Origin: Auanema rhodensis
Taxonomy: Eukaryota > Animalia > Nematoda
Direction of reading: 5' to 3'
DNA length: 64,000 nt
Assembly: GCA_964057225.1 (NCBI GenBank)
Contig: OZ059899.1
Coordinates: 6,014,001-6,078,000, forward strand
Shown here: positions 1-8,529 of the stretch, piece after piece
How the letters are laid out: the number at the start of each line of letters is the position of its first letter
Numbering within the stretch: the stretch's first letter is position 1
Position numbers and translations under genes: made by a program
The notes under the pieces: model-generated
Databases searched by the model: none
What the model saw: only the letters and a program-made list of their open reading frames with translations
What the model was told of the DNA's origin: nothing

Positions 1-3000
1 ATTGTAAGCAATGAGTGAATAATGAAATAAGAGTAGTTTGATATGATAGGCGTTTGAGCATATGTCCATGTACAAGTTGCAAGTATATATATGGACATAG
101 ATATAGATATAGTTACATATAGATAAACATACATATGTATACATGTATATATGCAATAGTTTGCTTCTGATGGCAACAGATGACGTAAACGAAGAAAAAT
201 ATATATTCAAAAAGGCCGTAATAATTATGAGATAATTTTTTTTATTTATTCACAATATTAAATTTTGATTTTAATTTTACACTCAAAAATGTCAACAACG
301 AATTAATTGAATGTTTAAGTATTGGCTAGTAGCAGCTAAAAAAAACGATGTTTGACGAGATAACGAACTGAAGTTACTATAGCATTATGAGTGAATACTA
401 TTATTAATGTCGCAAAATGATTTTTGTCACATGGTTATTTTACAAATCTGGTAAAAGAGGATATAACACTTTGATATTTTCTGTATATATATATATTTAT
501 ATGTATATGTACATTGATCTAATGTACAATCCAAAGATCATCTTTTAATAAAGTTTCAATTTCTTCATCCAGTTGCATGCTGCATTCTTGAATGTTAATT
601 TATCAATATGAGTGTTAAACTGGCTCACATCACTTAAGATGAAGTTATTACGAAGATCCAGCATGCATATGCATAATATCATTATGCAATCTATGAAGCT
701 AAATAATTAGCTTTTTGAGAACGTTGTATGATGATATCAGCATACAAATATCAATTACGCATATATGAGGATGTTTTTTGGGTTTATGAGATATTTTGAA
801 AAATAGTTTTTCTAATTTTAATAAGCAAAATCTGAAACATATATGTTATGTTTATTCATTCTGCTCTTTGATAATCAATCTTCCTAGAGATGAAAACTCA
901 CTTGCTGCTATGAAATCTAATTAAAACAGGATGATTATTCGGATACACAACTAGGACCACATATAATAAAGAAAGATATCAAAACTATTGACATGACATC
1001 AAATTTTCTCACATATATATATACATACACATATGAAGTTAACTCCGAAATCTCAAAAGAAATAGCTGCATCAATATAGGTTTTCTAGCTTCTGCACTTC
1101 TGTTGACGGGAATATATAATGTTAATATAATCTTTTCGAAAGGAACTAGTTAAGTAAAAAGACAGAAGATCTTACAAAATTGTGCTATTAGATAAGTAAT
1201 AGAAGCTCAGTAACGAAAAAGCTTTTTTTATTTTTAAATTAGTGGCTTCATTCACATATATTTTGTTTGACGTAGTAAGCTGAACAACTACAACTTCTAC
1301 TACTTTAAATAAGTAGGAGTAGAAATTAAAATAGAAGAAACTTTGATATGATAGAGCACGGCATTATTTATATTAAATCTGTGAGCATAGTGATATGAAG
1401 TATTTGAAATCTTAAGTAATTCTTAGTCGTAGTTTCAACACTTAAATGCCATTATTTCATCACATAGAGTAAATGTCAGGTCTTTAGTGAAATCTGTATA
1501 TACTTCAAAGTCTAACATTGAGTGTTTTTATCTTATGTTATTCTTGTTGAATATAATTAATCACGTCATATGAAAAGAAGACAAAAGAAGTACTGAAAGG
1601 TAATGAACTAATCTTGAGGGCGGATGAAAAAGAACTTACATGTATATGCATGCAATTCAAGTAGCAATTTTTGTTCAATAAGGTTGAAGAGGAATCCGAA
1701 AGACTGAGACGAAAAGCAATAAAAAAATCTAATCAGGTGAATTTGTATTTTGCTTTCTGGAAAAAAAAAGTATGTTTTCTTATTTCTTTGAAAATAAATT
1801 GCTTTCAAAAAAACCAGTTGTAAATGAATATCAAAATAAGCTGGCTTTCATTGCCAGAAGTTCTTTTTTGTATATGAAACTAATAAGATGTATTTATATC
1901 TCTAGGAAACATATAAGATAATGACGGAATTGAATACAAAAATATAATAAAGCTTTGATATTTATCCAAATGTATTTATATGTTCATACTAAATATACTA
2001 CTTAATGTGTTTATTTATATATTATTAAGATTAAGAAATATTACAAGATGATTTAGAGAAGAGTTATCGCCCAACAAATAGTTGTATTGCTTTTCGTTCA
2101 ACAAAAATATTCGACTGATGGTCAACGTTCCCAGAAATTGTTCTAATTATTCATTTTTATGATGAAGCTAGCTATTTACAATAATTATATGAAATGATTT
2201 CATATATTCGCGTCACCAAAATCATCAAGCCTAATCTTTTACATGTGAATGCATAATTTCTTCAGTAAATCGTGCTAGTCGCCTAGTTAAGAAGGCAGCA
2301 ATTGTTCATACTAACAAAGTGTCGAAAAATCCTCCAAGAAACGAGAATTTATATTTGTGGTTTAGCAACTAACACACGTTATTGCAAGCTGTAATGAAAT
2401 TAAGAAACATTTCTTGATCTTTGAGAACTTGAAGCTATTCTGTGGACGAAAATAGTATGTTTTCCTCAATGAATCCAAACACGTAAGAATCTGCAGCAAC
2501 TACTCTCACTGCACTTTGATTCACAAATGGGCATCAACTGTTTCCTTAAGGAATGTCATGCTCACTACCAATATACATATTTGGAAAATATACTATGATC
2601 GAATAATCGAACAACAAAACCTTCAGTTAGCTGATATCTGTTTCTATTTGAATTGATGATGCACATATTGTCCATGGTATTGAAGCTGTCACATAAAAAG
2701 AAGAAACATTTCTTTCAAATGATTGCGAAGAATTCTTATCTATTTTTGCTCCTATTCAAGAACAACAAACAAGGGAGTGTACCTTTTATTCGAGGTGGGA
2801 TGTTATTGAACCTAGATTCTTACCAAGATCAAAAGTCGGTGAAATCATATATAAAAGAAGTGGAAAAATTATCTGTATGAAATCAAGCTGCTTCTCTGAA
2901 AAACATTGTATACATTCCCAGTATATAATTCAAAACTTATTTTATTTTCTTAGACAACATACCTTATTTTTAAAAATCTATTGAATGTTTATATTTTACG

Positions 3001-3094
3001 ATTAGTGCAAATAATATTGTTCTGATATGCAAATTTTATGATATCATTCATAGCTAGCCTGAATACTATATAAGACATGTGTCGTTCAACAAGA

Positions 3095-3775
3095 ATGAAG
3101 AAAATGCTCGCGTTTGTGCTAAGTCTACTTTTTTCAACTTCCTTAGCATGTGCTCCACTAACACCTGCTCAAAATGGTAATTCAAATCTAATATGTAATT
3201 ATAATTTCACCATTTTCAGACACAAAAATGTCAAAAACTGCTACGTTTACATTCACCGCAAATCCTCTTGTTAGATGGACTTATGGTGATAACCCCGAAC
3301 TCGGACAACCAGCTGCCCAAGAAAAGGCCTTATCTTATGCAACAAGCGATATTACCCAAGCAGTAAGATAAATTACTAGAAAAAAATATAATCCATAATC
3401 ATTTAGATTCGTTCTAGTTTGGCCGATTACAATATAGATTATAATTCATTGAAATCAGTAGTAACATACACTCCTCAGGGATGTGAAAAAATTGATAAAG
3501 AATGTGGTAATGATGTTACTTGTAAAATAGCGGTAAACAGTATCACTGCTACATGTAAGGATAATGCTGCTGAGGCATTAACAACTAATACATACAAAAT
3601 CGAATTAACTAGTGCTACTGTGGTAATTAAGAATTTAAAATATATCTATATGAAATTCTGATATTTTTAGGCTGTTTCAAACTATGATTGGAGACGTTTA
3701 GCTGTCAAGCTCCGTGAAAAATTAGAAGTTAAGACTTTGGTTTTCGAATCAGATATCGTTATTTCCAGTGAATGA
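3095..3775 (+). CDS. Small secreted Cys-containing protein, 4 exons, unknown function
   Basis: Signal peptide MKKMLAFVLSLLFSTSLA-CAP; three short GT-AG introns join to one ORF ending SSE*; AATAAA follows. Confidence 0.7.
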
Positions 3776-3882
3776 TAACTTCAAAATTGCCTTTTATATG
3801 TAAATATTGAATATCAATAAAGATAATTTCATCAAAAATCTGAGATCTGTATTTCATACTTATATATCATAACACAATATAT

Positions 3883-6055
3883 TCAGACTTTACGTTTCTT
3901 AGCTCCCTTTTTGATAGCTTTAGAATCAGAAGGAGATTTTGGTCTCTTTTGTGCAAGTTGGGCATTGAAGAGCAATGCTTGAGCCCAACCAGCGTATTCG
4001 CCGAACTTTTCAATATAAAATTGGCCTGCAAATATATATGTTACAGAAAACACGAAAAGTTTTTTGATATTATACCAATCTCAGAGTGAACAGCAGGTGT
4101 TAATGATTTGCTGGAAAGGTTAGGTCTATAATTTTGCATAGTAATCTAGAATAATATTGTTATAATAAATACAGATTAATCATTAGACCTTGTAGACATG
4201 AGTATCAATAGGAACTACGTTATGTTTCTGAAGACCCATTAAACAAATGCAATCAGCAACCTAGAAAAAAGTTAATATAAACAAAAATGTCAACTAATAC
4301 TTACTTTAGGCCCAACCCCTGCGAATTGTCGAAGATTTTCTTTAGCTGTCTTCAAGTCTTTTGTTCTCTGATCATAAAGATAGTTTCTTTCGGTCTTATT
4401 TAGCATCTCGACAGTTTTCCTAAAACATTTGAAATTTTCAGCCCAAAATACTTTTTATTACGCAATATATCCAGCTCTGTAACCAAATCCATCAAGCCTC
4501 AATTGATTTTCCATTTTTGGTAGTCCTTTAACCAATTGATCAACTAAAGAATTCGATACAAATATTTAAACATCTTCTATTAATCAAACCAGTAGGAAAA
4601 GCAAACATGAAGTCCGCAAATTTGTTTAATATACACTGATCTTCTTCGGGAATTGGAGCAAGATATTCCATCTTTGAACCATACAAAAAACATAGACGAT
4701 TAACCATCTCTGAAATGAATATTAACTATTAGAAGTTTTGTTTAAATTATCATTTTACTTGATATTCGTTTTATATTATTATTAGCAGAACATATAAAGG
4801 CAAATAATGTTTCTAAAGGATCTTGATCTAAAATTCGTATGCCTTTGAGGTCCGGTTGAGTTATCAATAATTTTGAAATAAATTCATCGGCACTTGACCA
4901 TTCTTTACATAATTCTTCGAGATTTACATTACTCTGTTTCCAATAAAAGAAGATTTTATTTCTAAATATTTGGAAATTACCTGAAAGTATTTATTCAAAA
5001 CATCTTCATGATTATTAGTTGTGCTTGAGCTTGCAGCAAGAACAGAAAACTCAATCTGAAAACTAGCTACTGTTGATCCATATTGTGAAAAATAATGTCT
5101 ACCTTAGTGTCATCTAAACGGGTAATTTTCCATAAACGCTGGAAAGCTGTACCGAAGTAAGATCCATTTTCGTAAATCCATCTAAAAATTTAAAGTTAAA
5201 CAGAGGCCAAAATTGTAAACAAGATTAAGGCACACCAGCGTTTTCATATAGATTTATCTTTACAAGTACGCACCAATAGTATTGAAGTAAGAGATCGCGA
5301 GAGAAGTCAATAAATAAGTGGTCAGTTCCTTTTCTCACTTCCTCCATCAGCTTCTTTTTCGCCAAACTAAGTTTTTGACCATTATACCCTTCACTAACTA
5401 AGTTTGCTACGAGTTGACGTAGTGACTTCTCAAATAAAGCTAAGTTACTTGAAGATTCGCAAGGATGTTTCGATTGAGCCACTGCGGTTAATTCCGAAGC
5501 AGGTGAAACCAATAAGGGTAGTGATCGGATCTTGCAGGCCAGATCATGTAAATTAGTAAACTTGTAAACATCTTGAGGTATTTCTATCTCATCATTCATT
5601 TTACGAATCGTGTCAATTTCCACTTTCTTGATTCCTTGACGACAGTTATTCCGAGAGATTGCCTCATCAATGGCGCATTCCATAAGTACTACTAAGAAGG
5701 AATAGTGAAATGTTCGAGCTATGCGTTCGAATGGCCGTCTCATGCTTTGAAGATAAAAATTATCTTCGATGATTAAAGTTGTTTTTGGAGTCAAATCTTT
5801 AATAACATTTCTGATTTCATTTTCAAACTCCTTTCTTGATTTACGTGGATTATAGTTCTCAACTTTGTGTCCCACCATCTCATCAAACGACATAGTTATA
5901 CAGTCAATCTCATGTTTTAAATTATTAATTATAGTTGATTTCCCAGACGCAGGTATACCCATAATCAAAACAAGAGACATCTACCTGAAACTTTGTCCGT
6001 TTAGCAAAACTGAAGGTAAGTTTAATTGGGTAGACGAAAATTTGAGAACAGGCAT
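3883..6055 (-). CDS. OGG1: 8-oxoguanine DNA glycosylase/AP lyase (OGG1), multi-exon
   Basis: Exon 1 (6055-5985, MPVLKFSSTQLNLPSVLLNGQSF) splices to 5181 to give GQSFRW; further motifs GIRILDQDPLETLFAFICSANNNIKRI, GFGYRA, HhH GVGPKVADCICL, VPIDTHV, YAGWAQALLF. Confidence 0.9.
5225..5980 (-). CDS. PSTK: L-seryl-tRNA(Sec) kinase (PSTK)-like P-loop kinase, intronless, nested in OGG1 intron 1
   Basis: 251-aa ORF: LVLIMGIPASGKST (Walker A), IIEDNFYLQSMR, AISRN, and C-terminal LRQLV...LSLAKK helix typical of PSTK (KTI12 is the less likely alternative). Confidence 0.8.
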   Translation of the reverse strand: MSLVLIMGIPASGKSTIINNLKHEIDCITMSFDEMVGHKVENYNPRKSRKEFENEIRNVIKDLTPKTTLIIEDNFYLQSMRRPFERIARTFHYSFLVVLMECAIDEAISRNNCRQGIKKVEIDTIRKMNDEIEIPQDVYKFTNLHDLACKIRSLPLLVSPASELTAVAQSKHPCESSSNLALFEKSLRQLVANLVSEGYNGQKLSLAKKKLMEEVRKGTDHLFIDFSRDLLLQYYWCVLVKINLYENAGVP

Positions 6056-6342
6056 CTAAATTTGAAAAATAGCTATTGAAGAAAAAACTTCAAGACATTT
6101 CAGGAAAATCCTACATTTGATTTTGAAAAAAATATTTAACTACCTTATATTATCACAGTAGAATATTAAATAAAAATCTGTTGAACATCAAAAGAACAGA
6201 ATACATATTATATATAAATAGATAAAAATCCGAATATTACAGGCAAATAACCAGCATAACATGGGTTTCCAATCCTGATTGGGGTAAGGATTTGAAAGGC
6301 AAAATTATCATGCGTTAAAGAAAATACGTGTTTGAAACAATA

Positions 6343-8529
6343 CTAGACAAGACGTTCGTACCATTTTTTCGCCGAACGATTGAAATGTTTCTGAAATTTT
6401 TAATTTTTTTTATACATTAGATTAACTGATTAACCTTATCAATATACTGACAAAGGCATTGTTGTTTTGCACAATGTCTCGGAAGATAATCAGAAACTCC
6501 TAAAGATGGTCTTGAAGGAAAGACAAGGCGTTGCTAAAATAATAAACAAGCGACCTTCATATCAAATTATTTTTGTCATACCTTTACGGTATCCTTAACA
6601 TATCCCTGACTATATTTCAAAATTAAATGCACGGCCTGTTCTTCAATCTAAGTAATTTCATATTAAAAAATGTGAAAAATGCAAACATTACTTCTCGTTT
6701 AGTCATTTGTTTGCCAGAAGCTGATAGTGTTTCTCCTCCGTACACAACAGCACCTCCACTTGCTTCAATTCTAATAAGCCTTTCAATATCCGGAATACAA
6801 TCATCGATATCAAACCAAATGAAATTGATCTAAAACTATTAATTCTTCTACTGTTGTATTTGAAAATTTATCTATTCGAACAAATTTTCGAAAAAGAAAT
6901 TATTAAGAATCACCCTGCGGTTGCGTACAATACTAAATTATTATGTTTTATATGCAGATAATCAACTTTTTTTCTCGTCAATTCTGTGAAACTGTTTTCC
7001 CATCATGGGAAAATCTTTTTGTTATGACGCATCTACTCACCACAACTTTATGACAACTAAGTTGACCGCGATCTTCGATTCCGGCGAGAATGTTGTTCTT
7101 AATCAGAACTTTGTTTGCAGACTGGACACAATGACGAAGCCCGATTCTAATCTTAAAATAAGATGTTGCAAAAAAAGGATCTCGCGCAAAAAGCTCACTT
7201 GCTTCCTTATTATGGCACAACCTATTATCCCAGCAAAAAGAACGAAAATCCATACCAGGCAAAAAATCATGATTGGAAGTCCGCCCTGCTTAATTAGTTA
7301 TATAAAGCTGATGTCTATTTTGACTCACTTCTGTGTTCAAGAAAAGGACGACAAGTAGAACAACAATTGATAAAGTCATCCAAAAAGTAATTAGTCTCGA
7401 ATATAGTGTGGAAAAGCTATAATATAAAATTTTATGATATCGTATAATATAGTCAACTTTACCTTCGGAATCGGTAATCGTTAGTCAACAATTCCATAGC
7501 CATCAGAAAATCAGCTTGTGGTACCTAAACAATTTAGTTAAATATGTAGAGTGTGGAAATTATTCACATCTATTCCCTCAGCTCTAAGAGCAGCTGGCAT
7601 ACTTGAGGGTTCATACCGTGGAGGAATAATCCATGCACAACTGTTATTTTCGGGATACACTGTTGTTATTACTTTTGCATTCCCTATAAAATGTATGTTC
7701 AATTCACGAGCTGATCAATTTTGCAACAAAAAGCTGCAAATTTTGATAGCAAAGTCTCTATATTAAGGAATGATCTAAACTTTATAAATGGACAGTTTCA
7801 CTACAAGTCGATACTGTATGAAAGTAAATATTTCTTTGTTTGAACAGTGGACATATTGTGAGACATAGTAAAGTCGACAAGCCCATAACACTCAAAATTT
7901 TCACAAAATAAAATGAGCCATAGCTTAAAGTTATTTCAAAAATACAAGTACGGTTCAAACCACGATGAACTTACTTTTACTGGGAATAGGATGGTCAGGA
8001 GGATCCTTTTCTGTCGATACCTGCCCACTAAATTCTTGCATAGCATGAACAATAGGTGCTTGGCCAAGTTTCGAAGGATCTCAAAAAAAACAATATGTTT
8101 GAGAATTCAATGATAAAGAAATCTCAATAACGTACCAGCAATCATTTCGTTAGTAGGTAAAGGTGTTATTACTGGTCTTTCATTATCCTCAACGTCTAAT
8201 CTTTCTTCTGCTGCTACACTTTCTCGACCACTATCCATATCAATACTTTCTTCTCTGGTAACACTATGTCTTCCTTCATCAGATGCTGATCCTGGTCTCA
8301 TCTGAAACTAAAGGTTTTATGGGTTACAATGTCAGTAGCAGAAATAGAATAGTTACTTATAATATATGAAAAGTATTCTATATAGTTTTTAGAGAAAAAA
8401 ATGTATTTACAATTACATATATTAGAACAAAATATTTACCTCAGCAGGAGTAGACATAGGAATTTCATCGAATCCAACCCAGCTGCTTGGTCTTTGTCCT
8501 TCGCTTAGGGCATTTAGTGGGTCCGTCAT
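6343..8529 (-). CDS. TMEM268-like two-TM membrane protein, multi-exon
   Basis: Spliced exons give an acidic N-terminus, two TM helices, ANKVLIKNNILAGIEDRG and C-terminal RHCAKQQCLCQYIDK; family recalled by resemblance. Confidence 0.6.

What the first reader, a model, noticed from the sequence alone, without database searches (positions are those of the whole stretch)
5182..6060. PSTK nested in OGG1 intron 1 on the same strand, sharing one junction that can read as splice donor and as trans-splice acceptor
Seen: OGG1's conserved GQSFRW motif forms only if exon 6055-5985 splices to 5181. The 803-nt intron between them (others are about 45 nt) is almost filled by the intronless 756-nt PSTK ORF. 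The junction reads TTTCAG|GTAG ATG: GT is the OGG1 donor, TTTCAG is the consensus nematode 3' splice/SL acceptor, and the PSTK ATG is 4 nt downstream. If unspliced, the OGG1 frame stops at the TAG directly before that ATG. Inference: one pre-mRNA yields either OGG1 (cis-splicing) or PSTK (SL trans-splicing at the same junction, or reinitiation), an either/or switch between 8-oxoG repair and selenocysteine synthesis, both redox-related. The PSTK stop is only ~43 nt from the intron end, so its 3' end formation must also be unusual.
Basis: partly seen in the sequence, partly recalled or inferred. Interest (0 to 1): 0.88.

Follow-up and report, generated by a model that had tools for sequence, protein, structure and literature searches.

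The report
One nematode transcript, two unrelated enzymes
In this nematode, the gene for a DNA-repair enzyme (OGG1) and the gene for a selenocysteine-pathway kinase (PSTK) are interleaved in one transcription unit: which of two splice donors joins a single shared acceptor decides which enzyme the mRNA encodes, and the layout is conserved across distant nematodes, though it has been mis-annotated in public genomes.

Summary
OGG1 exon 1 (6055-5985, minus strand) must join 5181 to form GQSFRW. The 803-nt intron between them carries a 251-codon PSTK ORF. The junction reads TTTCAG|GTAG ATG, with an in-frame TAG.

RNA-derived contigs from four runs change the picture. The PSTK region is not a free-standing intronless gene. 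Transcripts run unbroken from exon 1 through PSTK to a second donor (TATTG|GTGCGT, 5274/5273). They then splice to the same acceptor (5182). This creates a TGA stop at the joint, so PSTK is 235 aa. The transcripts continue through OGG1 exons 2-10, which act as 3'UTR. Contig ends fall exactly k-1 bases from both junctions, which implies the exon1-exon2 (OGG1) path is also present.

The same geometry occurs in Auanema sp. JU1783, an unnamed Logan nematode and Steinernema hermaphroditum. In S. hermaphroditum, S. carpocapsae and Heterorhabditis bacteriophora it is annotated as PSTK-OGG1 "fusions". PSTK stands alone in Haemonchus, Pristionchus, Caenorhabditis, Dirofilaria and Mesorhabditis.

The either/or logic is therefore supported, but it works through competing cis donors. 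Trans-splicing at the shared junction, and any redox regulation, remain untested.

I found no paper describing this locus.

The parts
5985..6055 (-). Shared exon 1. It encodes the first 23 2/3 codons of OGG1 (MPVLKFSSTQLNLPSVLLNGQSF+AG). In the PSTK isoform it acts as a 24-codon upstream ORF.
   Evidence: Read. It is 71 nt in all four species. Against Auanema, 11 codons differ synonymously and 4 non-synonymously. It aligns to human OGG1 residues 26-46, including G42 of SGQSFRW (via the Steinernema ortholog).
6056..6062 (-). AATTTAG directly before the OGG1 ATG. This is a candidate SL trans-splice acceptor of the unit.
   Evidence: Sequence. Auanema also has ATAG|ATG. The upstream gene's contigs end at 6144, 88 nt away. 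No SL was observed.
5979..5987 (-). Donor 1, CAG|GTAGAT. Its use removes all of PSTK and yields OGG1 mRNA. The preceding TTTCAG also fits an acceptor consensus.
   Evidence: TTCAGGTAG is invariant in four species. PSTK contigs start exactly at 6014 = 5985+29, the k-1 overlap expected from a graph branch at this donor. The Steinernema isoform P0165 joins exon 1 to exon 2.
5981..5983 (-). TAG that closes the exon-1 reading frame when donor 1 is not used.
   Evidence: Conserved in Auanema, Steinernema and the Logan nematode.
5276..5980 (-). PSTK (L-seryl-tRNA(Sec) kinase) coding sequence as present in the mRNA: 235 codons ending ...LLLQYY.
   Evidence: Pfam KTI12/PSTK family, 1.8e-14. PSTK-named nematode relatives. 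PDB M. jannaschii PSTK, 1.4e-8. Top NCBIfam hits TIGR03575/TIGR03574. Contigs cover 6014-5274 unbroken in all four runs.
5268..5276 (-). Donor 2, TTG|GTGCGT. Joining 5274 to 5181 makes TAT TG|A, a TGA stop for PSTK.
   Evidence: X4 record 16 and X2 record 8 run from 5274 straight into exons 2+3. Lengths were checked. The same TG|GT donor and TGA occur in Auanema and the Logan nematode L007.
5182..5273 (-). Short intron 1b (92 nt). It contains the last 16 codons and the TAA of the genomic PSTK ORF.
   Evidence: The depth of bin 5237-5403 is fully accounted for by the contig that ends at 5274, so nothing covers 5237-5273 in any run. Beyond the donor, the tail is not conserved as protein.
5182..5984 (-). 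Long intron 1 (803 nt), removed in the OGG1 isoform.
   Evidence: The homologous introns are 813 nt in Auanema and 808 nt in Steinernema.
5182..5193 (-). Shared acceptor TTAAATTTTTAG|A.
   Evidence: AG|ATGG is invariant in four species.
3883..5181 (-). OGG1 exons 2-10: 5181-5103, 5055-4981, 4933-4759, 4709-4590, 4543-4462, 4419-4305, 4260-4189, 4145-4076 and 4025-3883 (including the stop). They are coding in the OGG1 isoform and 3'UTR in the PSTK isoform.
   Evidence: Joints. Model and translation. Exon 4 matches human OGG1.
6144..6345 (-). Stop codon (6345-6343) and 3'UTR of the upstream DUF4481-family gene, a likely operon partner.
   Evidence: Contigs. Alignment to the Auanema DUF4481 gene end. 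DUF4481 Pfam on the Auanema and Pristionchus neighbours.

Best explanation
This is a compound OGG1/PSTK locus read out by competition between two 5' splice sites for one 3' splice site.

Transcription, possibly as the downstream part of an operon with the DUF4481 gene, produces one pre-mRNA.

Route 1: donor 1 (5985/5984) pairs with the acceptor at 5182. The whole PSTK sequence is then removed as an 803-nt intron. The mRNA encodes full OGG1, whose first 24 residues come from exon 1. These include the glycine of GQSFRW that in human OGG1 recognises 8-oxoG.

Route 2: donor 1 is skipped and donor 2 (5274/5273) pairs with the same acceptor.
- Exon 1 becomes a 24-codon upstream ORF closed by TAG.
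- The PSTK ATG follows immediately.
- PSTK ends at a TGA assembled across the splice joint.
- OGG1 exons 2-10 serve only as 3'UTR and supply the poly(A) site.

Each transcript therefore encodes one enzyme or the other.

Shown: the donor-2 joint, the contiguity of exon 1 with PSTK, clean removal of intron 1b, and conservation of every element in other nematodes.

Inferred:
- That the exon1-exon2 joint is present in these runs. This rests on contig ends, on conservation, and on the annotated Steinernema isoform.
- That PSTK is translated from route 2 by reinitiation or leaky scanning past the short upstream ORF.
- That the unit is SL-trans-spliced at 6056/6055.
For: RNA contigs:
- Four spliced (RNA-like) runs give contigs covering 6014-5274 without a break.
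- X4 record 16 (1699 nt) continues from 5274 into exon 2, exon 3 and all later OGG1 exons to 3856. The sum of the pieces from the exon list is exactly 1699.
- In X1 and X3 the PSTK contig is 770 nt = 741 + 29. It starts at 5985+29 and ends 29 nt into exon 2. These are the unitig ends expected at k=31 if exon1->PSTK, exon1->exon2 and PSTK->exon2 all exist (the two upstream exons both end in G).
- No contig covers 5237-5273 in any run.

Translation: the OGG1 model gives a complete 333-aa protein with catalytic K and D. The long isoform reads uORF-TAG-PSTK(235)-TGA.

PSTK C-terminus: stand-alone PSTKs of Haemonchus, Caenorhabditis and Pristionchus end within a few residues of ...QYY.

Conservation:
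- Auanema: exon 1 71 nt, GTAG, PSTK ATG 6 nt on, donor 2 TATTG|GTGCGT, TGA at the joint, introns of 813 and 94 nt.
- Logan nematode L007: the same, with CACTACTG|GTTAGT giving TGA.
- Steinernema hermaphroditum: exon 1 71 nt, intron 808 nt, annotated isoforms of 319 aa (exon1-exon2 OGG1) and 521-540 aa (PSTK joined to exon 2).
- Fusion models also exist in S. carpocapsae and Heterorhabditis.

Exon 1 is under coding constraint: 11 synonymous versus 4 non-synonymous codon differences.
Against: - The 5985->5181 joint itself is not in the printed joint table; 8 joints were not shown. It is inferred, not read.
- In X2 and X4 the contig does not break at exon 2, so the OGG1 path may be rare or absent there.
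- Contigs cannot show 5' ends, strand or abundance. The proportion of the two isoforms and the true 5' end of the PSTK mRNA are therefore unknown.
- A stop-start spacing of 0-2 nt (window, Auanema) is poor for classical reinitiation.
- Auanema exon 1 holds an extra out-of-frame ATG that overlaps the PSTK start. This would hamper scanning-based translation and favours a leader added at the junction.
- A PSTK mRNA with about 1 kb of spliced 3'UTR might be expected to be an NMD substrate.
Confidence: 0.75

Rival explanations
1. The PSTK mRNA is made by SL trans-splicing onto TTTCAG|G at 5985/5984, the same phosphodiester used as the OGG1 donor. This discards exon 1, so PSTK is translated from SL-GUAG-AUG with no upstream ORF. 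Donor 2 splicing would still apply downstream.
For: - TTCAG|GTAG is invariant in four species, with an unusual G at +4 of the donor.
- The PSTK ATG lies 4-6 nt downstream in three of them. This is a typical nematode SL-to-ATG distance (general knowledge).
- The out-of-frame ATG in Auanema exon 1 would be harmless under this model.
- Earlier notes report SL1 gene arrays in this genome (I did not check them).
Against: - All four PSTK contigs include 30 nt of exon 1 joined colinearly to 5984. None starts at 5984, as would be expected if a leader path converged there.
- No leader-like loose end is listed at 5984.
- TTTCAG is dictated by the conserved Ser-Phe-Arg codons and the intron phase.
- In L007 the PSTK ATG is about 110 nt from the junction.
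- None of this is decisive, because 5' ends are poorly covered and contigs drop rare forms.
Confidence: 0.25
2. The long isoform is translated into a PSTK-OGG1 fusion protein. In this species that would require read-through of the junction UGA; in Steinernema and Heterorhabditis the junction is a sense codon.
For: - PSTK and OGG1 exon 2 are in the same phase across the joint in the window, Auanema and L007.
- Public models in S. hermaphroditum, S. carpocapsae and H. bacteriophora are continuous PSTK-OGG1 ORFs.
Against: - The joint is TGA in three species.
- UGA followed by U is not a known leaky context (general knowledge).
- No SECIS-like or other Rfam match at E<=1 in 3000-8000.
- The fusion would lack OGG1 residues 1-24, including the GQSFRW glycine.
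- Gene finders only report in-frame joints. Of the 5 GT and 2 GC candidate sites within the last 80 nt of the S. hermaphroditum PSTK ORF (5755-5830), 5 give an early stop.
Confidence: 0.05
3. PSTK is an ordinary nested gene with its own promoter inside or just upstream of exon 1. The exon-1-containing PSTK RNA seen here is read-through or incompletely spliced OGG1 pre-mRNA.
For: Nested same-strand genes with their own promoters exist in nematodes (general knowledge). Contigs cannot show transcript starts.
Against: - Intron 1b and all eight downstream introns are cleanly removed in the same contigs, so this is processed RNA, not pre-mRNA.
- The PSTK contig depth is of the same order as the OGG1 3' exons in all runs (with the tool's caveat on depth).
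- There is only 4 nt between donor 1 and the PSTK ATG, and the nearest non-coding DNA is the 88-nt spacer upstream of exon 1.
Confidence: 0.08

Closest known systems
Cholinergic gene locus (C. elegans unc-17 nested in the first intron of cha-1; VAChT/ChAT in animals)
   Same: Two unrelated proteins come from one transcription unit. The inner gene lies on the same strand inside the first intron of the outer gene. A shared 5' exon is used, and alternative splicing decides the product. The layout is conserved over long evolutionary distances.
   Different: There the shared exon is non-coding and the nested gene has its own 3' end. Here exon 1 is coding for OGG1 and becomes an upstream ORF for PSTK. 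PSTK has no 3' end of its own: it splices to the host's exon 2, gets its stop codon from the joint, and uses the host's exons as 3'UTR. This comparison is from general knowledge; it was not tested here.
Alternative 5' splice-site choice in simple retroviruses (avian leukosis virus env takes its AUG and first codons from gag by splicing)
   Same: A short 5' coding exon supplies the start codon and N-terminus of the downstream protein only when spliced. Left unspliced, the RNA encodes a different protein.
   Different: This is a cellular locus. The 'unspliced' product (PSTK) starts at its own ATG after a stop, not at the shared ATG. A second donor removes its tail. The comparison is from general knowledge.
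Nematode operons, including SL1-type operons with mutually exclusive processing
   Same: This is a polycistronic context. The upstream DUF4481 gene's RNA ends about 88 nt before an AG|ATG acceptor, and DEAD-helicase/DUF4481/PSTK synteny is conserved.
   Different: PSTK and OGG1 are not separated by 3' end formation plus trans-splicing. OGG1 exon 2 has no start codon and needs exon 1, which lies upstream of PSTK.
Recursive (ratchet) splice sites, AG|GT
   Same: A 3' splice-site consensus abuts a 5' splice site at one phosphodiester (TTTCAG|GTAG).
   Different: No evidence here that the AG is used as an acceptor. The exon upstream of it is a real coding exon.
Annotated PSTK-OGG1 'fusion' proteins (S. 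hermaphroditum QR680_017714 / KAK0404938-40, S. carpocapsae L596_029805, H. bacteriophora A0A1I7XW02)
   Same: These are the same locus and the same PSTK-to-exon-2 splice.
   Different: In the window, Auanema and L007 the joint is a stop codon, so no fusion ORF exists. The database entries are probably the PSTK isoform with its 3'UTR read as coding, although a real fusion in Steinernema is not excluded.

Membership tests
PSTK (L-seryl-tRNA(Sec) kinase, KTI12/PSTK superfamily) | N-terminal P-loop kinase domain with Walker A GxxxxGK[ST] | tested here: met
   GIPASGKS at residues 8-15. G8, P10, G13 and K14 are invariant in the nine-sequence alignment. Pfam PF08433, 1.8e-14, 54 bits against a cut-off of 22.
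PSTK (L-seryl-tRNA(Sec) kinase, KTI12/PSTK superfamily) | Walker B aspartate and RxxxR motif | tested here: met
   D33, R110 and R114 (RNNCR) are invariant across nematode PSTKs. The roles of these residues are assigned from published archaeal PSTK structures (general knowledge).
PSTK (L-seryl-tRNA(Sec) kinase, KTI12/PSTK superfamily) | Closest named relatives are PSTK rather than KTI12 | tested here: met
   Hits are named L-seryl-tRNA(Sec) kinase or pstk-1 in Haemonchus, Parascaris, Dirofilaria, Syphacia and Pristionchus. The best PDB hits are M. jannaschii PSTK. The best NCBIfam hits are TIGR03575 and TIGR03574.
PSTK (L-seryl-tRNA(Sec) kinase, KTI12/PSTK superfamily) | Score above the NCBIfam equivalog cut-off | tested here: not met
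   52.5 bits against 382 for TIGR03575. Nematode PSTKs are short and divergent, and the C. elegans pstk-1 accepted in PMC4114682 is of this type. I treat this as a limitation of the model, not as an exclusion.
PSTK (L-seryl-tRNA(Sec) kinase, KTI12/PSTK superfamily) | Phosphorylates Ser-tRNA(Sec) | not testable with these tools
   Needs a biochemical assay or 75Se labelling.
OGG1 (8-oxoguanine DNA glycosylase, HhH-GPD) | OGG_N domain plus HhH-GPD domain | tested here: met
   Window exon 4 matches human OGG1 residues 96-148 at 2e-9. The Auanema and Steinernema orthologs carry PF07934 + PF00730. The Steinernema ortholog scores TIGR00588 at 5.5e-79, 265.5 bits, below that model's curated cut-off of 397.85, and human OGG1 at 8e-69. 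The window protein aligns to them over its full length.
OGG1 (8-oxoguanine DNA glycosylase, HhH-GPD) | Catalytic lysine and aspartate (human K249, D268) | tested here: met
   GVGPKVADCICLMGL...VPIDTHV in the spliced translation. The same columns are seen in the human alignment of the ortholog.
OGG1 (8-oxoguanine DNA glycosylase, HhH-GPD) | N-terminal GQSFRW strand with the 8-oxoG-contacting glycine (human G42) | tested here: met
   Present only when 5985 is joined to 5181. Its position relative to human residues 26-47 is seen.
Nested gene with shared 5' exon (cha-1/unc-17 type) | Inner gene entirely within the first intron of the outer gene, on the same strand | tested here: met
   The PSTK ORF 5980-5225 lies inside intron 5984-5182.
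Nested gene with shared 5' exon (cha-1/unc-17 type) | Nested gene has its own 3' end and poly(A) site | tested here: not met
   Contigs splice 5274 to 5181 and continue to the OGG1 3' end. Nothing covers 5237-5273.
Nested gene with shared 5' exon (cha-1/unc-17 type) | Shared 5' exon is non-coding | tested here: not met
   Exon 1 encodes OGG1 residues 1-24 and is under coding constraint.
Nematode SL2-type operon (for the PSTK to OGG1 step) | Upstream cistron is polyadenylated and the downstream cistron is trans-spliced at an acceptor before its own start codon | tested here: not met
   There is no separate PSTK 3' end. Exon 2 has no in-frame ATG, and OGG1 needs exon 1, which lies upstream of PSTK.
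Nematode SL2-type operon (for the DUF4481 gene to this unit) | About 100-nt spacer between the upstream 3' end and the downstream trans-splice acceptor, with SL on the downstream mRNA | tested here: inconclusive
   The upstream contigs end at 6144 (6160 in X4) and the AG|ATG acceptor is at 6056/6055, leaving 88 nt with no contig across it. No leader sequence was seen.
Dual-use AG|GT splice site (acceptor and donor at one bond) | The AG is used as a 3' or trans-splice acceptor | not testable with these tools
Only contigs were available.
True PSTK-OGG1 fusion gene | Continuous ORF across the joint | tested here: not met
   TAT TG|A = TGA in the window, Auanema and L007.

The most novel reading that the evidence does not exclude
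The bond between 5985 and 5984 is used in two opposite ways. It serves as the cis donor that makes OGG1 mRNA. It also serves as an SL trans-splice acceptor that makes an upstream-ORF-free PSTK mRNA. The spliceosome's choice at a single conserved TTCAG|GTAG would then set the ratio of an 8-oxoG repair enzyme to a selenocysteine-synthesis enzyme, possibly in response to redox or selenium state.
Probability: 0.2. Interest if true: 0.8.

Novelty: new variant of a known kind. Interest (0 to 1): 0.62.

Why it matters
**An unusual gene architecture.** Two unrelated enzymes, a tRNA(Sec) kinase and a DNA glycosylase, are encoded by one transcription unit. A 71-nt exon is the N-terminus of one protein and an upstream ORF for the other. 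One acceptor serves two donors. The inner gene's stop codon exists only after splicing.

**It is old.** The geometry is the same in the suborders Tylenchina (Steinernema) and Rhabditina (Auanema, Heterorhabditis, this genome). Several lineages, including Caenorhabditis, which lacks OGG1, have since undone it.

**It corrects public annotation.**
- The Steinernema and Heterorhabditis "fusion" proteins are probably the PSTK isoform with its 3'UTR read as coding.
- The Auanema OGG1 model lacks exon 1 and part of exon 2.

**It is testable.** Steinernema hermaphroditum and Auanema are genetically tractable. They offer a natural system to study donor competition, translation after a very short upstream ORF, and tolerance of a long spliced 3'UTR.

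I found no paper that mentions the PSTK/OGG1 linkage. The six papers containing both words are unrelated.

Tried and rejected
- **Exact-product look-up of the 235-aa spliced PSTK in public assemblies.** Not on record, so the RNA contigs could not be read directly.
- **Look-ups of P0033, P0026 and P0006.** Not on record. The Steinernema locus was reached through the longest isoform, P0163. No DNA was obtained for Heterorhabditis or S. carpocapsae.
- **Rfam at E<=1 and ARAGORN on 3000-8000.** Nothing found. There is therefore no SECIS-like element that could recode the junction UGA, and no tRNA(Sec) gene nearby.
- **Sigma-70 promoter and terminator scan.** Irrelevant for a eukaryote; ignored.
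- **Extended identity around donor 2 as a regulatory element.** 25 nt are identical between the window and Auanema. I do not claim this, because equally long identical runs occur inside PSTK coding sequence (for example IEDNFYLQS) and the run is not shared with L007 or Steinernema.
- **Retroposition of an intronless PSTK into OGG1.** Unlikely, because PSTK keeps its DEAD-helicase/DUF4481 neighbours in species both with and without linked OGG1.
- **Depth ratios between contigs.** Not used as measurements, because the tool warns against it.
Full report
**1. What is in the sequence**

All features lie on the minus strand.
- An ATG at 6055, directly preceded by AATTTAG, opens a 71-nt exon that ends ...GGA CAA AGT TTC AG at 5985.
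- The next bases are GTAG, then ATG (5980). This ATG starts a 251-codon ORF that runs to a TAA at 5227-5225.
- The interval 5984-5182 (803 nt) begins GTAGAT and ends TTAAATTTTTAG.
- Joining 5985 to 5181 gives MPVLKFSSTQLNLPSVLLNGQSFRWIYENGSYFG...
- Eight further introns of 42-50 nt (all GT..AG) then produce a complete 333-aa protein. It contains GVGPKVADCICLMGL and VPIDTHV, the HhH-GPD lysine and aspartate.
- If the intron is not removed, the exon-1 frame reads AGG TAG and stops immediately before the PSTK ATG.

**2. What the two genes are**

The ORF is a PSTK:
- Pfam KTI12/PSTK family, 1.8e-14.
- The nearest proteins are an Auanema sp. JU1783 protein (51% identity) and proteins named L-seryl-tRNA(Sec) kinase or pstk-1 in Haemonchus, Parascaris, Dirofilaria, Syphacia and Pristionchus.
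- The best solved structures are Methanocaldococcus PSTK.
- The two best NCBIfam models are the PSTK equivalogs, though far below their cut-offs.
- Walker A, an invariant Asp and the RxxxR motif are conserved.

The outer gene is OGG1:
- Exon 4 alone matches human OGG1 at 2e-9.
- The orthologous Steinernema protein matches human OGG1 at 8e-69 over its full length.
- That alignment places exon 1 opposite human residues 26-46, including G42 of SGQSFRW.
- G42 is known from the human structures as the residue that discriminates 8-oxoG from G (general knowledge). An OGG1 lacking exon 1 should therefore be non-functional.

**3. RNA evidence**

Four runs of one study hold about 65% of the sampled words of 3800-6400. 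Laid on 3400-8400, their contigs lack every short intron, with GT..AG ends, and leave the 6072-6143 spacer uncovered. They therefore behave as RNA assemblies, although the record does not say so.

Three results matter.

(a) Unbroken PSTK contigs that continue into OGG1.
- In all four runs a contig covers 6014-5274 without interruption.
- In X4 the same 1699-nt contig continues from 5274 through 154 nt, then 4933-4759, and on to 3856.
- Exons 2 and 3 are 79 + 75 = 154 nt.
- The sum 741+79+75+175+120+82+115+72+70+170 equals 1699 exactly (exon list).
- So 5274 is spliced to 5181.

(b) Donor 2 and the junction stop.
- The bases at that site are TAT TG|GTGCGT.
- The splice gives TAT TG|A, a TGA stop, so the mRNA encodes a 235-aa PSTK ending ...LLLQYY.
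- Stand-alone PSTKs of Haemonchus, Caenorhabditis sp. 36 and Pristionchus end within a few residues of that point.
- No contig covers 5237-5273. The depth of that bin is fully explained by the contig ending at 5274.
- The last 16 codons of the genomic ORF are therefore intronic.

(c) Contig ends that match graph branch points.
- Each PSTK contig starts at exactly 6014, which is 5985 plus 29.
- In X1 and X3 it is 770 nt, that is 741 plus 29 nt of exon 2.
- For a k=31 graph these are precisely the unitig ends expected if three paths coexist: exon 1 into PSTK, exon 1 into exon 2, and PSTK into exon 2.
- Both upstream exons end in G, which explains 29 rather than 30.

Limits of this evidence:
- I take (c) as good but indirect evidence for the OGG1-type joint. 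The joint table omitted 8 joints, and I could not call the tool again.
- In X2 and X4 the contig does not break at exon 2, so the OGG1 path may be weak there.
- No leader-like loose end is listed at 5984 or 6055, but contigs cannot show 5' ends.

**4. Conservation**

| Species (locus) | Layout |
|---|---|
| Auanema sp. JU1783 (L001) | 71-nt exon 1 (MPVLKISTSQLNLTSVLLNGQSF); CAG\|GTAGTT ATG; PSTK; TATTG\|GTGCGTAC; 94-nt short intron; TTTGCAG\|ATGG; introns of 813 and 94 nt; TGA at the joint |
| Logan genomic contig of an unnamed nematode (L007) | 71-nt exon 1; TTCAG\|GTAGAG; PSTK about 110 nt further on; CACTACTG\|GTTAGT; acceptor TTTTTTCAG\|ATGG; TGA at the joint |
| Steinernema hermaphroditum (L006, suborder Tylenchina) | 71-nt exon 1; CAAAGTTTCAG\|GTAGGG ATG; 251-codon genomic PSTK ORF; 808-nt intron |

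- In Auanema the public OGG1 model starts at an internal ATG and misses exon 1.
- Exon 1 differs from Auanema at 11 codons synonymously and at 4 non-synonymously.
- The S. hermaphroditum annotation lists one 319-aa isoform that joins exon 1 to exon 2. It also lists three isoforms (521, 535 and 540 aa) that join different PSTK-tail donors to exon 2 in frame.
- S. carpocapsae (543 aa) and Heterorhabditis bacteriophora (467 aa) carry similar "fusion" models.
- TTCAGGTAG at donor 1 and AG|ATGG at the acceptor are invariant in the four loci.

PSTK stands alone, with no OGG1 match in the fetched flanks, in:
- Haemonchus placei
- Pristionchus pacificus
- Caenorhabditis sp. 36
- Dirofilaria immitis
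- Mesorhabditis belari

Two further points bear on the history:
- Caenorhabditis lacks OGG1 altogether, while Brugia and Trichinella have it (PMC2941479). Many nematodes have stand-alone OGG1 models.
- The neighbours are also conserved. STAG, DEAD helicase, (DUF4481) and PSTK lie in the same order in Auanema and Steinernema. DUF4481-PSTK is found in Pristionchus and DEAD-PSTK in Dirofilaria.

The simplest reading is an old arrangement, at least as old as the split of Tylenchina and Rhabditina, that several lineages later dismantled. This is an inference.

**5. Mechanism**

My best explanation is competition between two donors for one acceptor.
- Donor 1 (CAG|GTAGAT) with the acceptor removes PSTK and gives OGG1 mRNA.
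- Donor 2 (TTG|GTGCGT) with the acceptor keeps PSTK. It turns exon 1 into a 24-codon upstream ORF ending at TAG, creates the PSTK stop at the joint, and leaves OGG1 exons 2-10 as 3'UTR.
- Both donors depart from the nematode consensus, as do several others in this gene. This is compatible with balanced use.

How PSTK is translated is open.
- One option is reinitiation or leaky scanning past the short upstream ORF.
- The contigs show that exon-1-containing PSTK RNA exists, but they cannot say whether a leader-capped form also exists.
- The extra out-of-frame ATG in Auanema exon 1 and the tight TAG-ATG spacing argue mildly for the leader model.
- The 110-nt spacing in L007, and the fact that TTTCAG is forced by the Ser-Phe-Arg codons, argue that the resemblance to an acceptor need not be functional.

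A fusion protein is excluded as the main product here by the TGA. It remains possible in Steinernema, though gene finders only report in-frame joints, and most alternative donors there give early stops.

Nothing here tests regulation by redox state or selenium.

**6. Comparison and novelty**

- The nearest known system is the cholinergic locus (unc-17 within cha-1).
- This locus differs in three respects that I tested: the shared exon is coding, the inner gene lacks its own 3' end, and its stop codon is made by splicing.
- It is not an operon junction, because exon 2 cannot start a protein.
- I found no paper that links PSTK and OGG1. The nematode selenocysteine-machinery survey does not mention it (PMC4114682).
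- I rate it a new variant of a known kind, of moderate to good interest. It is a clean, deeply conserved and experimentally accessible case, and it corrects several database entries.

Noticed in passing
window 6236-6310 (minus strand), 3'UTR of the upstream DUF4481-family gene: A block of about 75 nt (CATGATAATTTTGCCTTTCAAATCC...TCAGGATT...TATGCTGGTTAT..CCTGTAA) is strongly conserved with Auanema sp. JU1783, while the surrounding UTR is not. There is no Rfam match at E<=1. It may contain a hairpin (TTTCAAATCC / GGATTGGAAA).
   Followed up: partly
window 6056-8400; L001 828-5632; L003 598-5167; L005 3734-7611; L006 2851-4764: PSTK keeps the same upstream neighbours across nematodes: a DUF4481 gene in the window, Auanema and Pristionchus, and a DEAD-box helicase in Auanema, Steinernema and Dirofilaria. 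A Setaria model even fuses helicase and PSTK. In the window the DUF4481 RNA ends about 88 nt before the AG|ATG of OGG1, which is operon-like spacing. Whether DUF4481 has any link to selenocysteine use was not examined.
   Followed up: partly
window 4759-4933 (OGG1 exon 4): In X1-X3 this 175-nt exon forms its own 233-nt contig, flanked by about 29 nt on each side, with lower depth than the neighbouring exons. This suggests a second path around it, for example exon skipping, which would shift the OGG1 frame. The relevant joints were among those not printed.
   Followed up: no
L001 6845-8079 (Auanema sp. JU1783); proteins P0033, P0163, P0164, P0166, P0026: Public gene models look wrong. The Auanema OGG1 model starts at an internal ATG and lacks exon 1 and part of exon 2. 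The Steinernema hermaphroditum, S. carpocapsae and Heterorhabditis models read PSTK plus OGG1 as one protein named DNA-(apurinic or apyrimidinic site) lyase or OGG_N domain protein.
   Followed up: partly
L007 1875-1882: In the unnamed Logan nematode an AATAAA lies inside the short intron between donor 2 and the acceptor. PSTK might have an alternative poly(A) site of its own there. The window has only GATAAA at the corresponding place.
   Followed up: no
L001 5974-5976: Auanema exon 1 contains an extra out-of-frame ATG (AAATGG, good context). Its reading frame overlaps the PSTK start codon. The window, Steinernema and L007 lack it.
   Followed up: no
window 3407-3838 (plus strand) and 3819-3885: A convergent plus-strand gene (intron 3622-3669) ends within a few tens of bases of the OGG1 3' end. 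In run X2 a single contig runs through both, so the two 3'UTRs overlap or abut.
   Followed up: no
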